A stretch of 62,851 bases of DNA, counting the filler, from Octopus bimaculoides (lineage: Eukaryota), in NCBI RefSeq assembly GCF_001194135.2. It is 7 parts of 6 records of this genome, joined end to end, with 100 filler letters (N's around TTAATTAATTAA, not from the genome) between each part and the next. Parts side by side here need not be neighbours in the genome. Positions count along the whole stretch, not along the records: positions 48,413 to 53,795 come from NW_026423552.1; 6 more parts are not named here. One strand, 5' to 3'. The first letter of the stretch is position 1, and each line of letters begins with the position of its first letter. The position numbers and the translations under genes were made by a program. This document shows, one piece after another, positions 49,128 to 53,795 of the stretch. The notes beneath the pieces are model-generated. The model did no database searches and had not been told where the DNA came from. It saw only the letters and a list, made by a program, of their open reading frames with translations.

Positions 49128-52100
49128 TCATAAGACCAACATGCTCTCCTTGGAGTGAGAGGGGCAAGTTTTTTCACAACTGGAGGCCGAAGAAATAGTG
49201 TCAGACCATAAACGTAATTCTGACGTATCTGGTGTTATTGACAAATGTCGACTTGATCTTGAAGGAATATTTTCAGAGGCCGACCAATAACGAGAAGATG
49301 AAGTGTTTAGTGAAATGGGCAAATATAGAGGAGCCCCCGAAGGTGTAGCTTCGACGGCAGTCCAGTAACGTGAAGATGCTATTGTGCTAGGGGATAAGGA
49401 CCTTAGGGGAATGTCACTGTCCTTCGAAATTCTTGACTTTTCACGTAATGGTGAAGTGGAGAGATGTACTAGTGAATCTTCTGACATAGGTGGTATAACG
49501 GAACTGTTACGATCTGTCGCCGGCGAATCTTCGCGTTCTGGAAATATTTTAGGTNNNNNNNNNNNNNNNNNNNNNNNNNNNTGTGGTGACATGTGTCGCA
49601 GAACGGGATAGGAATCAACTTCCAGTGAATCGCTTGAAATAGGGTCTTCAACAGAACCAACACGAGCCGGCGAAATCGAAACGTGTCGATCTGTTAGTGG
49701 CTTTGAAGTCTTCCGCGGCGAAGGTGTTGTAGGTGGAAAGATTGTTCTTCTTACAGGTGACCGATATGATTGCACTGGGCTGGCTANNNNNNNNNNNNNN
49801 NNNNNNNNNNNNNNNNNNNNNNNNNNNNNNNNNNNNNNNNNNNNNNNNNNNNNNNNNNNNNNNNNNNNNNNNNNNNNNNNNNNNNNNNNNNNNNNNNNNN
49901 NNNNNNNNNNNNNNNNNNNNNNNNNNNNNNNNNNNNNNNNNNNNNNNNNNNNNNNNNNNNNNNNNNNNNNNNNNNNNNNNNNNNNNNNNNNNNNNNNNNN
50001 NNNNNNNNNNNNNNNNNNNNNNNNNNNNNNNNNNNNNNNNNNNNNNNNNNNNNNNNNNNNNNNNNNNNNNNNNNNNNNNNNNNNNNNNNNNNNNNNNNNN
50101 NNNNNNNNNNNNNNNNNNNNNNNNNNNNNNNNNNNNNNNNNNNNNNNNNNNNNNNNNNNNNNNNNNNNNNNNNNNNNNNNNNNNNNNNNNNNNNNNNNNN
50201 NNNNNNNNNNNNNNNNNNNNNNNNNNNNNNNNNNNNNNNNNNNNNNNNNNNNNNNNNNNNNNNNNNNNNNNNNNNNNNNNNNNNNNNTGTATGTCTGGAG
50301 ATCGATGGAATTGATGAAATGTTCGACAAAGGTGTGTATCGATCTTCGAATGCATTGATACGAGATCGACGTGGTGTACTGTGCCAGGGTTGCCATTGCA
50401 CTGTGAAATTGCGGTCCTCTTCAAATGACCTTCCATTTGTTGTTCTATATNNNNNNNNNNGAAATTGCGGTCCTCTTCAAATGACCTTCCATTTGTTGTT
50501 CTATATGACCAGTGTGGTCTCAATGTTGCATCTCTGGATTGCGATGGAATTGCTGAAATGTTCGACAAANNNNNNNNNNCAATGTTGCATCTCTGGATTG
50601 CGATGGAATTGCTGAAATGTTCGACAAAGACGAGTATCGATCTTCGAATGTATTGATACGGGATCGACGTGGTGTACTTTGCCAGGGTTGCCATTGCGCT
50701 GTGAAATTGAGGTCCACTTCAAATATCCTTCCATCTGTTGTTCCATATGACCTGTGTGGTCTCAATATTGAATCTCTTGATTGCGATAGAATTGATGAAA
50801 CGTCCGACAAAGGTGAGTATCGATCTTCGAATGCATTGATACGAGATCGACGTGGTGTAATGTGCCAGGGTTGCCATCGCGCTGTGAAATTCTCGTTTNN
50901 NNNNNNNNNNNNNNNNNNNNNNNNNNNNNNNNNNNNNNNNNNNNNNNNNNNNNNNNNNNNNNNNNNNNNNNNNNNTCACTGGAGATAGAAGAAATAGTGT
51001 CAGACCACAAACGTAATTCCGTCGTAGTTGAGCTTCTAGACAAATGTCGACTTGATCTTGTAGGAGAATTTTCACAGGCCGTCCAATAACGGGATAATGA
51101 AGTGTTTAATGAAATGGNNNNNNNNNNAGTTGCCCTCGAAGATGTAGTTTCAAATGCAGTCCAGTAGTGTGAAGAGTTTGTGGTGCTAGGGGATATTGAC
51201 CTTAAGGGAATGTGACTGTCCTTTGAAATTCGTGATTTTTCACGTAATGGTGAAGTGGAGGGATGTACCCGTGAATCTTCTGACATAGGTGGTATAACGT
51301 AAATATTACGATCTGTCGCCGGCGAATCTTCGTGTTCTGGAAATACTTTATNNNNNNNNNNNNNNNNNNNNNNNNNNNNNNNNNNNNNNNNNNNNNNNNN
51401 NNNNNNNNNNNNNNNNNNNNNNNNNNNNNNNNNNNNNNGGTCTTCAACAGAACCAACACGAGCCGGCGAAATCGAAATGTGTGAATGTGTTAGTGGCTTT
51501 GAAGTCTTCCGCGGCGAAGGTGTTGTAGGCGAAAAGATTGTTCTTCTTACAGGTGACCGATATGATTGCACTGGGCTGGCTANNNNNNNNNNNNNNNNNN
51601 NNNNNNNNNNNNNNNNNNNNNNNNNNNNNNNNNNNNNNNNNNNNNNNNNNNNNNNNNNNNNCTTGGTGTACTGTGCCAGGGTTGCCATTGAGCTATGAAA
51701 TTGCACTCCTCCTCAAATGACCTTCCATCTGATGTTCCATCTGAGCTATATGATCGGATCCGTCTGATAGCTGCGATTGATNNNNNNNNNNNNNNNNNNN
51801 NNNNNNNNNNAGAGCAATAAGGTGATTCTCTCTGATTTAGTGGTATTGTCAAATGTCGACATGAATCAACTTCCAGTGAATCGTTTGAAATAGGGTCTTC
51901 AACAGAACCAACNNNNNNNNNNAATCAACTTCCAGTGAATCGTTTGAAATAGGGTCTTCAACAGAACCAACAGGAGCCGGCGAAGTAGAAAGGCGTCCAT
52001 CTGTTAGTGGCTTTGAAGTCTTCCGCGGCGAAGGTGTTGTAGGTGAAAAGATTGTTCTTCTTANNNNNNNNNNGAAGTCTTCCGCGGCGAAGGTGTTGTA

Positions 52101-53795
52101 GGTGAAAAGATTGTTCTTCTTATAGGTGATCGATATGATTGCACTGGGCTGGCTATTCTGAATATTGTACGTCTGGAGATTGACGGAATTGACGAGATAT
52201 CCGACAAAGACGTGTAGCGATTTTTGAATCTATTGAAGCAGGATCGACTGGGTGTACTGTGCCAGGGTTGCCATTGAGCTATGAAATTCTCGTTTTCTTG
52301 AAACGGACTCCTATTTGATATTTNNNNNNNNNNNNNNNNNNNNNNNNNNNNNNNNNNNNNNNNNNNNNNNNNNNNNNNNNNNNNNNNNNNNNNNNNATAA
52401 CCGTAATTCCGTCGTAGTTGAGCTTCTTGACAAATGTCGACTTGAATCAACTTCCAGTGAATCGTTTGAAAGAGGTTCTTCAACAGAACCAGCATGAGCC
52501 GGCGAAGTAGAAAGGCGTCCATCTGTTAGTGGCCTNNNNNNNNNNCTTGAAGTCTTCCGCGGCGAAGGTGTTGTAGGTGAAAAGAGTCTTCTTCTTACAT
52601 GTGACCGATATGATGGCATTGGGCTGGCTGATCTCAGTATTGTATGTCTGGAGATCGATGGAATTGATGNNNNNNNNNNGGGCTGGCTGATCTCAGTATT
52701 GTATGTCTGGAGATCGATGGAATTGATGAGATATCCGACAAAGATGTGTAGCGATTTTTGAATCTATTGAAGCAGGATCGACTTGGTGTACTGTGCCAGG
52801 GTTGCCATTGAGCTATGAAATTCTCGTTTTGTTGAAACGGACTCCTATTTGATGTTTCATATGAGNNNNNNNNNNGAGCCGTGTCGTTGGGTTCGACTGG
52901 TAGATACAGATATTCCATCACTGGATGTAGAAGAAACAGTGTCAGACCATAAACGTAATTCCGTTGTAGTTGAGCTTCTTGACAAATGTCGATTTGATCT
53001 TGAAGGAGTATTTTCACAGGCCGTCCAATAACGGGATAATGAAGTGTTTAATGAAATGGNNNNNNNNNNNNNNNNNNNNNNNNNNNNNNNNNNNNNNNNN
53101 NNNNNNNNNNNNNNNNNNNNNNNNNNNNNNNNNNNNNNNNNNNNNNNNNNNNNNNNNNNNNNNNNNNNNNNNNNNNNNNNNNNNNNNNNNNNNNNNNNNN
53201 NNNNNNNNNNNNNNNNNNNNNNNNNNNNNNNNNNNNNNNNNNNNNNNNNNNNNNNNNNNNNNNNNNNNNNNNNNNNNNNNNNNNNNNNNNNNNNNNNNNN
53301 NNNNNNNNNNNNNNNNNNNNNNNNNNNNNNNNNNNNNNNNNNNNNNNNNNNNNNNNNNNNNNNNNNNNNNNNNNNNNNNNNNNNNNNNNNNNNNNNNNNN
53401 NNNNNNNNTGTTGTGCTAGGGGATTTTGACCTTAATAGAATGTCACTATCCTTTGAAATTCGTGATTTTTTACGTAATGGTGAAGAGGAGGGATGTACTA
53501 GTGAATCTTCTGACATAAGTGGTATAACGGAAATGTTACGATCTGTCGCCGGCGAATCTTCGCGTTCTGGAAATATTTTAGGTNNNNNNNNNNNNNNNNN
53601 NNNNNNNNNNNNNNNNNNNNNNNNNNNNNNNNNNNNNNNNNNNNNAGGAATCAACTTCCAGTGAATCGTATAAAAGAGAGTCTTCAACAGAACCAACAGG
53701 AGCCGCTGAAATCGAAATGTTTCGATCTGTTAGTGGCTTTGAAGGCTTCCGCGGCGAAGGTGTTGTAGGTGAAAAGAGTCTTCTTCTAACATGTG
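49128..53795 (-). CDS. Large tandem-repeat coding region (partial, gapped, 5' end missing) for an unrecognised Ser/Pro/Arg/Thr-rich modular repeat protein
   Basis: Each of the ~18 sequenced pieces between gaps has a stop-free minus-strand frame made of the same three modules. A (61 aa/183 bp, measured 50681 to 50864): NF.AQWQPWHSTP.RSR.N.F..RY..LS.ISSIPS.SR.T.LR...SY.T..GRSFEE. B (~60 aa): ASPVQSYRSP.RRTIFSPTTPSPRKTSKPLT...SISPA.VGSVED.IS.DSLEVDS. C (~125 aa): PKIFPEREDSPATDRN...SPLR.KSRISKDSDIPLRS.SPSTT.SSRYWTA...ISLNTS.SRYWTACEN.P.RS.RHLS...TELRLWSDT. WQPW markers at 50383, 50681, 50864, 51675, 52261, 52795; TPSPRK markers at about 49711, 51508, 52021, 52081, 52556, 53748. Stop TGA at 49128-49130. 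No start or splice acceptor is visible (contig ends at 53795). Confidence 0.7.

What the first reader, a model, noticed from the sequence alone, without database searches (positions are those of the whole stretch)
49128..53795. Unrecognised giant modular repeat protein (A/B/C modules) encoded on the minus strand
Seen: a whole 5.4-kb scaffold piece consists of three interleaved coding modules (61, ~60 and ~125 aa) repeated about 4-5 times. Copies differ by many substitutions, yet none of the sequenced pieces upstream of 49128 contains a stop in the module frame. This is not satellite or TE-like sequence and I recognise no Pfam domain. Inference: one very large exon (on the order of 1,500 codons if gap sizes are right) of a lineage-specific, probably disordered S/P/R/T-rich protein with regularly spaced aromatic motifs (WQPWH, RYWTA, RLWSD).
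Basis: partly seen in the sequence, partly recalled or inferred. Interest (0 to 1): 0.85.

Follow-up and report, generated by a model that had tools for sequence, protein, structure and literature searches.

The report
Orphan Ser/Pro/Arg/Thr-rich tandem-repeat coding exon
This badly fragmented scaffold piece carries a real, stop-free minus-strand reading frame built from three repeated modules. It most likely encodes part of a large, disordered, mucin-like repeat protein with no detectable relatives, which is plausible but not extraordinary, and it has no expression data behind it.

Summary
From 53795 down to a TGA at 49128-49130, every sequenced piece has exactly one stop-free minus-strand frame, and these frames encode the same three modules: A (61 aa), B (about 58 aa) and C (125 aa).

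There are 17 N gaps, not 6.
- Five 10-N gaps are unmerged contig overlaps (46-49 nt exact) and join in frame.
- Five more fit paralogue-predicted lengths in frame.
- Seven cannot be tested.

1,009 in-frame residues are sequenced. About 1,450 codons are implied if the remaining gap sizes are right.

Evidence for coding:
- A consensus unit this open arises in 5 of 20,000 shuffles.
- At least 170 substitution events between copies produced 0 stops, against about 9 expected (P about 9e-5).
- No frameshifting indels occur in the intact copies.
- Aromatic codons are conserved (P = 0.0035).
- The adjacent tail, 48413-49127, decays with about 6 stops and 17-nt and 1-nt deletions.

Evidence against: overall dN/dS is about 1, there is no third-position excess, and no homologue turned up in any library. 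No start, expression or taxon information is available.

The near-open plus-strand frame, with its CXXCH Pfam hit, is an antisense by-product.

Verdict: probably a lineage-specific disordered repeat protein exon, moderately interesting. The "single 1,500-codon exon" claim is unproven.

The parts
53646..53795 (-). B module copy (residues 10-58), cut off by the edge of the piece. The ORF is open at its 5' end.
53409..53583 (-). C module, residues 1-58
52876..53059 (-). C module, residues 80-125, plus the C-to-A junction peptide DGISVSTSRTQRHG
52546..52865 (-). Full A module running in frame into B residues 1-27. The 10-N gap at 52670-52679 is an unmerged 49-nt overlap.
52397..52535 (-). B residues 28-58 joined directly and in frame to the C tail (SRHLSRSSTTTELRL). 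C residues 1-100 are skipped.
51811..52323 (-). A + B + variant C tail (CRHLTIPLNQRESPYCS), 131 codons after merging two 49-nt overlaps (gaps 51913-22 and 52064-73)
51662..51781 (-). Junction peptide plus the start of A, with an in-frame 9-nt (SDG) insertion
51439..51582 (-). B module, residues 1-47
50976..51351 (-). C module in two runs (residues 2-75 and 80-125). The 10-N gap 51118-27 equals the 10 nt predicted from the paralogue.
50288..50898 (-). 2.7 tandem A modules (183-nt period), 165 codons after merging 46- and 49-nt overlaps
49582..49786 (-). B module plus the B-to-C linker (YPVLRHMSP)
49128..49554 (-). Last intact C module, then the unique tail CEKTCPSHSKESMLVL and a TGA stop at 49128-49130
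48413..49127 (-). Decayed continuation of the array (A start, C, variant C tail, A, partial A). It is 80-87% identical to the consensus, with about 6 stops along the best-frame path, a 17-nt deletion near 48674 and a 1-nt deletion near 48490.

Best explanation
The minus strand of 49128-53795 is the 3' part of a protein-coding region. It probably forms one long, intron-poor exon, encoding at least 1,009 and perhaps about 1,450 residues of a lineage-restricted tandem-repeat protein built from three modules (A 61 aa, B about 58 aa, C 125 aa) in variable order.

Shown: the frame is maintained. Stops and frameshifts are excluded, and every type of module junction is sequenced in frame. Most residues drift almost neutrally, while aromatic (W/Y/F) and Ser positions are kept.

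Inferred: selection acts mainly on read-through and on a few "sticker" residues within a Ser/Thr/Pro-rich spacer. A missense change in one of many redundant repeats would be nearly neutral, whereas a nonsense or frameshift mutation would truncate everything downstream.

Inferred further: the product is an intrinsically disordered, basic, heavily modifiable polymer with [ST]P sites enriched 1.8-fold. It would be a mucin-like or material-forming multivalent protein. Array size would change by unequal crossing-over. The decayed repeats below 49128 are former coding units cut off by a frameshift and stop.
For: - One stop-free, homologous minus frame in all 12 merged pieces.
- Consensus unit open in 5 of 20,000 shuffles.
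- At least 170 substitution events. The neutral expectation is 5.4% stop-creating (about 9) and 0 stops are seen in 948 codons, P about 9e-5.
- The same events create stops at the neutral rate (6-10 of 170) in the other five frames.
- All 36 blastn HSPs between intact copies that were scored are ungapped and frame-preserving. The only gapped HSPs involve the 48413-49554 piece.
- The only indels are 9-nt in-frame ones.
- A-to-A, A-to-B, B-to-linker, B-to-C-tail, C-to-junction and junction-to-A joins are all read through in frame within contigs.
- Aromatic codons show 1 nonsynonymous event against 7.6 expected, P = 0.0035. Ser codons show 0.29 per codon against a mean of 0.51.
- C module omega is about 0.6.
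- Internal control: the adjacent tail at similar or higher divergence has about 6 stops and frameshifting deletions. Fisher P = 4.6e-5 against the intact part.
- Codon-position composition is strongly periodic, with C at 40% of position 2 and 68% A+T at position 3.
- Composition and disorder.
Against: - Overall dN/dS is about 1, and B is at 1.9.
- There is no third-position excess of substitutions (69/48/53).
- No homologue at E <= 0.01 in the word-indexed search of 5.8 billion proteins, and none at E <= 0.001 among 1.84 billion representatives or in PDB.
- No start codon, signal peptide, splice or poly(A) evidence. There is no AATAAA downstream.
- Decayed copies lie directly adjacent.
- De Bruijn contigs of 100-320 nt may be subfamily consensi that hide copy-specific stops.
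- Scaffold order and seven gaps are untestable.
- Library coverage of the unknown source taxon is unknown.
Confidence: 0.62

Rival explanations
1. The array is an ORF-bearing but non-functional tandem array. A coding exon, or a fragment of one, was amplified into a macrosatellite or pseudogene array. The frame is still open in the younger or assembled subfamily copies without being translated.
For: - Omega is about 1 and there is no codon-position bias.
- Decayed copies with stops and frameshifts directly continue the array.
- No homologues anywhere.
- No poly(A) signal.
- Exact 46-49-nt contig overlaps show branching, collapsed repeat assembly.
Against: - 0 stops against about 9 expected from the subfamily-level substitutions, P about 9e-5. 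Assembly collapse does not bias that test.
- No frameshifting indel among the intact copies.
- Aromatic positions are conserved.
- C module omega is about 0.6.
Confidence: 0.2
2. The pieces do not form one exon. The scaffold is a mis-ordered or collapsed join of several shorter exons or paralogous genes from one repeat family, so the giant size is an assembly artefact.
For: - 17 gaps in 5.4 kb, with contigs of 102-319 nt.
- Five pseudo-gaps with duplicated flanks.
- As written, only 6 of 17 gaps are in phase.
- Seven gaps are untestable, including the 501-nt and 349-nt ones.
Against: - Every kind of module junction is read in frame inside contigs.
- Ten gaps resolve in frame.
- Met is only 0.4% and there is no recurrent start, so the units are not separate genes.
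- The offsets between the two B-C blocks are consistent at 1796-1799 nt.
Confidence: 0.12
3. The coding strand is the plus strand. A Cys-rich repeat protein with CQGCH (CXXCH, haem-binding-like) motifs is encoded antisense to the proposed ORF.
For: - A plus-strand frame is stop-free in about half of the pieces.
- Pfam Paired_CXXCH_1 scores 21.4 bits, just above its 20.6-bit cut-off, E = 2e-4.
Against: - That frame has 2 stops in the consensus and 15 in the copies, including a conserved stop in every C copy and a stop right after CQGCH in three A copies.
- Substitutions create stops in it at the neutral rate, 7 of 170.
- Its openness is reproduced by shuffling the codon order of the minus ORF, 21 +/- 3.6 stops against 15.
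- CQGCH is simply the reverse complement of WQPWH.
Confidence: 0.02
4. It is a transposable-element or satellite sequence with no host protein function.
For: It is repetitive and orphan, and it assembled poorly.
Against: - No TE protein domain.
- No inverted or terminal repeats.
- No regular head-to-tail array by TRF.
- Module order is variable with in-frame junctions.
- Stops are depleted.
Confidence: 0.04

Closest known systems
Mucin-type PTS tandem-repeat exons, including 'orphan' mucins that arise by exonic repeat gain (PMC2515642; PMC1552070; PMC9417175)
   Same: - A large repeat-encoding coding region rich in Ser/Thr/Pro (S+T 29.8%, P 9.5%, at least 4 repeats). It passes the compositional screen of PMC2515642 (S+T > 25%, P >= 5%, at least 4 repeats).
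- The repeats are poorly conserved, there are no sequence homologues, and short reads assemble it badly.
- Selection acts on frame and composition rather than on sequence.
   Different: - Ser far exceeds Thr, Arg is 10%, and W/Y/F motifs are conserved.
- The modules are long (61-125 aa) and heterogeneous rather than short PTS units.
- No VWD, SEA or signal sequence is seen, although the N-terminus lies outside the piece.
- Glycosylation is untested.
- PMC1552070 warns that composition-only calls give false positives.
Giant single-exon repeat proteins of the S100-fused type (filaggrin, hornerin); from my own knowledge, not tested
   Same: One large exon made of long (hundreds of aa), nearly identical Ser/Arg-rich, disordered repeat units, with copy-number variation and truncated or decayed terminal repeats.
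   Different: That family is vertebrate-specific and has an S100 EF-hand head and Gly/His/Gln richness. There is no sequence similarity here, and Pfam finds nothing.
Serine/arginine-rich (RS-domain, SRRM-like) disordered proteins; from my own knowledge
   Same: S/R/P-rich, basic and predicted disordered, with many potential phosphosites.
   Different: RS/SR dipeptides are not enriched, 5.3 against 4.5 per 100 aa expected. No RRM or PWI domain is in the piece. Discrete 61-125-aa modules replace low-complexity RS runs.
Coding macrosatellites / ORF-containing tandem arrays
   Same: Units of hundreds of bp to kb are repeated in tandem with an open frame, there is higher-order periodicity (about 1.8 kb), and array edges are decayed.
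   Different: Here the units have no start codon of their own and run into each other in frame in variable order. They behave as domains of one polypeptide rather than as one gene per unit.

Membership tests
Mucin-type (PTS-repeat) protein | Compositional and repeat screen: S+T > 25%, P >= 5%, at least 4 repeats (PMC2515642) | tested here: met
   S+T 29.8%, P 9.5% over 1,009 residues. A and B each have 6 copies.
Mucin-type (PTS-repeat) protein | Signal peptide, secretion or a membrane anchor | not testable with these tools
   The 5' end of the ORF is cut off at the edge of the piece, 53795.
Mucin-type (PTS-repeat) protein | Associated VWD, SEA or other mucin domains | tested here: not met
   No Pfam family matches any minus-frame peptide in the piece. 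Such domains could lie outside the piece.
Mucin-type (PTS-repeat) protein | Dense O-glycosylation of the repeats | not testable with these tools
   This needs biochemistry.
RS-domain (SR/SRRM-like) protein | Enrichment of RS/SR dipeptides | tested here: not met
   5.3 per 100 aa against 4.5 expected from composition.
Non-coding satellite DNA | Regular head-to-tail array with no constraint on any reading frame | tested here: not met
   TRF finds no array, although the N gaps reduce its power. Module order is variable. 0 stops against about 9 expected in one frame only.
Transposable element | TE-type protein domains, or terminal or inverted repeats | tested here: not met
   Pfam finds none, and there are 0 inverted repeats.
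Transposable element | Dispersed high copy number in the host genome | not testable with these tools
   The host genome is not available. There is no true match in the prokaryotic, viral or metagenome collections.
Multihaem cytochrome c (Pfam Paired_CXXCH_1), plus strand | An uninterrupted reading frame carrying the CXXCH units | tested here: not met
   15 stops in the copies and 2 in the consensus. Stops arise at the neutral rate. Frame openness is explained by the codon usage of the minus ORF.
Protein-coding sequence under purifying selection | dN/dS clearly below 1 and a third-position excess of substitutions | tested here: not met
   Omega is about 1.0 overall (A 1.1, B 1.9, C 0.6). Events by codon position are 69/48/53.
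Protein-coding sequence under purifying selection | Depletion of nonsense and frameshift changes relative to neutral expectation | tested here: met
   0 of about 9 expected stops, P about 9e-5. There are no out-of-frame indels. The decayed tail serves as a contrast.

The most novel reading that the evidence does not exclude
A very large (more than 1,400 aa in this fragment alone), taxon-restricted protein family with no detectable relatives. Three long modules place conserved aromatic "stickers" (WQPWH, RYWTA, RLWSD) in fast-drifting Ser/Thr/Pro/Arg spacers. It would be a new multivalent, phase-separating or material-forming (mucus, adhesive or matrix) polymer, kept only by selection on read-through and on the stickers.
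Probability: 0.3. Interest if true: 0.55.

Novelty: new member of a known kind. Interest (0 to 1): 0.3.

Why it matters
If it is expressed, this would be an unannotated giant repeat protein that short-read assemblies and homology-based annotation both miss. It also shows clearly that dN/dS of about 1 does not by itself refute coding in redundant repeat proteins. Here the signal of selection lies in the absence of stops and frameshifts and in a few conserved aromatic sites. In practice it marks a locus that needs long reads and transcript data. It does not open or settle a long-standing question.

Tried and rejected
- Tandem Repeats Finder found no arrays, because gaps and variable module order break the periodicity.
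- Pfam found nothing for the minus-frame peptides.
- The antisense Paired_CXXCH_1 hit was rejected as a by-product.
- Word-indexed search of 5.8 billion proteins with an A-B-C composite gave 0 hits.
- Full phmmer against 1.84 billion representatives gave 0 hits.
- PDB phmmer gave only E = 1.3 noise.
- Rfam found nothing.
- Exact-pattern scans with conserved A-core (27 nt) and B-core (24 nt) DNA covered the prokaryotic genome and metagenome collections, and the A core also covered the viral collection. They found nothing except L001. That hit is a 24-25-nt chance match in a 60% GC contig, with no extension at DNA or protein level.
- Literature search for the motif peptides found nothing relevant.
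- AF2 on A x1.7 and on C gave low-confidence models (pLDDT 47.6 and 40.1), so no fold search was run.
- There is no poly(A) signal downstream of the stop on the minus strand.
- Dinucleotide statistics (GC 42.9%, CpG o/e 1.0) do not identify the taxon.
- A MAFFT protein alignment misplaced the second half of C because of C's internal RYW duplication. It was replaced by ungapped placement from the blastn offsets.
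Full report
**What is in the sequence**

The piece 48413-53795 consists of 18 runs of read bases (4,019 nt) separated by 17 N gaps (1,364 nt). The scan note lists only six of those gaps. Six-frame translation shows that every run above 49128 has exactly one stop-free minus-strand frame. These frames encode mutually homologous peptides. The frame ends at a TGA at 49128-49130, after a unique tail ...LWSDTISSASSCEKTCPSHSKESMLVL. At 53795 the frame is cut by the edge of the piece.

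**Gaps, tested first**

As written, only 6 of 17 gaps keep the phase, which is the chance level. Gap lengths as written therefore prove nothing either way.

- Five of the eight 10-N gaps (at 50451, 50570, 51913, 52064, 52670) are flanked by exact 46-49-nt suffix/prefix overlaps. These are unmerged de Bruijn contigs. Merging them gives continuous open frames of 165, 131 and 86 codons.
- Two further 10-N gaps (52536-45, 52866-75) join through 2-3-nt overlaps, at exactly the length seen in paralogous copies and in frame.
- Gap 51118-27 equals the 10 nt predicted from the paralogue.
- Gap 51782-810 fits a 10-codon stretch seen in the decayed paralogue. Gap 49555-81 is in phase as written, but there is no contiguous paralogue to check its length. 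Gap 51352-438 is in phase and one codon short of expectation. These three rest on my own count against the pieces and frames.
- Seven gaps, including the 501-nt and 349-nt ones, cannot be tested.

The duplicated overlaps plus their N add 292 artefactual nt. The implied length is about 1,450 codons, of which 1,009 residues are actually sequenced. Contigs this short inside a repeat mean that order and copy number in the scaffold are unreliable.

**Anatomy**

Reading the minus strand from 53795 downwards, the order is:
- B, C, junction, A, B, C tail
- A, B, variant C tail, junction, A, B, C
- A-A-A, then the 501-nt gap
- B, linker, C, stop

The modules:
- A is 61 aa, with a 183-nt period and the motif NF..QWQPWH.
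- B is about 58 aa (SYRSP.RRTIFSPTTPSPRKTSKPLT...DSLEVDS) plus a 19-aa linker.
- C is 125 aa, with an internal SRYWTA.E..PS duplication and RLWSD.

Every kind of junction (A-to-A, A-to-B, B-to-linker, B-to-C-tail, C-to-junction, junction-to-A) is read through in frame inside a contig. Met is 0.4% of residues and there is no recurrent start. The units therefore behave as domains of one polypeptide, not as separate genes. The offsets between the two B-C blocks (1796-1799 nt) suggest a higher-order period of about 1.8 kb.

**Is the open frame more than chance?**

- The 717-nt consensus unit is open in one frame. Only 5 of 20,000 dinucleotide-preserving shuffles have any open frame.
- Codon alignments of the copies give at least 170 independent substitution events. 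With the observed mutation spectrum, 5.4% of random changes would create a stop, so about 9 are expected. No stop exists in 948 aligned codons, P about 9e-5. In the other five frames the same events create 6-10 stops each, which is the neutral rate.
- All 36 blastn HSPs between intact copies that were scored are ungapped and frame-preserving. The only gapped HSPs involve the 48413-49554 piece. The only indels are two 9-nt in-frame ones.
- Internal control: the 715 nt below the stop (48413-49127) continue the array (A start, C, variant C tail, A, partial A) at 80-87% identity. They carry about 6 stops along the best-frame path, a 17-nt deletion near 48674 and a 1-nt deletion near 48490. The contrast of 6/238 against 0/1009 codons gives Fisher P = 4.6e-5.

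Assembly collapse could hide copy-private stops. It does not bias the test on subfamily-level substitutions.

**What kind of selection?**

There is no classical purifying selection.
- Events are 48 synonymous against 120-122 nonsynonymous, which equals the neutral ratio. Omega is about 1.0 overall (A 1.1, B 1.9, C 0.6).
- Events by codon position are 69/48/53. Pairwise NG86 values range from 0.2 to 3.8.

The rates are heterogeneous, however. The 15 consensus W/Y/F codons show 1 nonsynonymous event against 7.6 expected (P = 0.0035). Ser codons change at 0.29 per codon against a mean of 0.51. The W and Y part of this overlaps with stop avoidance.

The simplest reading is inference. In a protein of many redundant repeats a missense change is nearly neutral, while a nonsense or frameshift change truncates everything downstream. 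Selection is then visible mainly on read-through and on a few aromatic positions.

**The other strand**

A plus-strand frame is stop-free in about half of the pieces. It carries CQGCH, the reverse complement of WQPWH, and this gives a Pfam Paired_CXXCH_1 hit just above the cut-off (21.4 against 20.6 bits).

That frame has 2 stops in the consensus and 15 in the copies, and it gains stops at the neutral rate. Its openness is reproduced by shuffling the codon order of the minus ORF, 21 +/- 3.6 stops against 15. It is an antisense by-product.

**Nature of the product**

- Composition is S 21.5%, R 10.4%, P 9.6%, T 9.0%. R+K is 13% and D+E 9.4%.
- [ST]P sites occur at 5.0 per 100 aa against 2.8 expected. 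RS/SR dipeptides are not enriched. Hydropathy is 0.413, just on the disordered side of the Uversky boundary at 0.426.
- Single-sequence AF2 gives pLDDT 47.6 for A x1.7 and 40.1 for C, with only short hairpins. This is weak evidence, but it is consistent with disorder.
- The composition passes a published mucin-type screen of S+T > 25%, P >= 5% and at least 4 repeats (PMC2515642). The authors of the related PTSpred method warn of false positives when VWD or SEA domains are absent (PMC1552070).

I therefore file it as working like a mucin-type or sticker-and-spacer repeat polymer, not as a demonstrated mucin.

**Relatives**

None were found.
- 0 hits in the word-indexed 5.8-billion-protein search.
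- 0 hits by full phmmer against 1.84 billion representatives.
- Nothing in PDB, Pfam or Rfam.
- Conserved-core DNA patterns are absent from the prokaryotic, viral and metagenome collections. The exception is a 24-25-nt chance match with no extension.
- A literature search for the motifs found nothing relevant.

Coverage of the unknown source taxon in these libraries cannot be assessed, so "orphan" is provisional.

**Verdict**

This is most likely (about 0.6) the 3' portion of a genuine, lineage-restricted, disordered tandem-repeat coding region.

The main rival (about 0.2) is an untranslated, exon-derived array that has not yet decayed. The "single 1,500-codon exon" is an extrapolation from a fragmentary short-read scaffold.

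Such orphan repeat ORFs are a known kind of thing, and interest is moderate to low until long reads and transcript or peptide data exist.

Noticed in passing
window 51352-51438, 51583-51661, 51782-51810, 51913-51922, 52064-52073, 52324-52396, 52536-52545, 52670-52679, 52866-52875, 53060-53408, 53584-53645: Eleven further N gaps lie inside the finding's range and are not in the scan program's gap list. The piece has 17 gaps in all, and 25% of it is N.
   Followed up: yes
window 50451-50460, 50570-50579, 51913-51922, 52064-52073, 52670-52679: These 10-N 'gaps' are flanked by exact 46-49-nt duplicated sequence. They are unmerged k-mer overlaps of short-read contigs. They add 292 nt of artefact and create false frameshifts when the sequence is read as written.
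   Followed up: yes
window 50288-50898, plus strand: The antisense frame gives three CQGCH motifs and a Pfam Paired_CXXCH_1 hit just above the gathering score. It is a false positive produced by the reverse complement of WQPWH.
   Followed up: yes
window 48413-49127: The repeat array continues past the stop codon as decayed copies, with stops, a 17-nt deletion near 48674 and a 1-nt deletion near 48490. The last 60 nt or so (48413-48472) match no module.
   Followed up: partly
window 49179-49865 vs 50978-51661: Two B-C blocks lie at a constant offset of 1796-1799 nt, even across estimated gaps. This hints at a higher-order repeat of about 1.8 kb, and suggests the non-10-N gap sizes are fairly accurate.
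   Followed up: partly
window 51811-51912 and 48769-48822: A second type of C tail and junction (SRH[LF].IP.NQRESPY...GNIFLASCDGS...IR) replaces the usual ...TTTELRLWSD... ending in one intact and one decayed copy. B can also join directly to the C tail, skipping 100 residues of C. These are in-frame module shuffling variants.
   Followed up: partly
L001 771-794 (metagenome contig Ga0315287_10473178): An exact 24-nt match to the conserved B-module core sits in a 60% GC contig. There is no extension at DNA or protein level, so it is a chance match.
   Followed up: yes
window 48413-53795: There is strong strand asymmetry (plus strand G 25.8%, T 30.4%, C 17.1%). TpA is depleted (o/e 0.62) and CpG is not depleted (o/e 1.0).
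   Followed up: no
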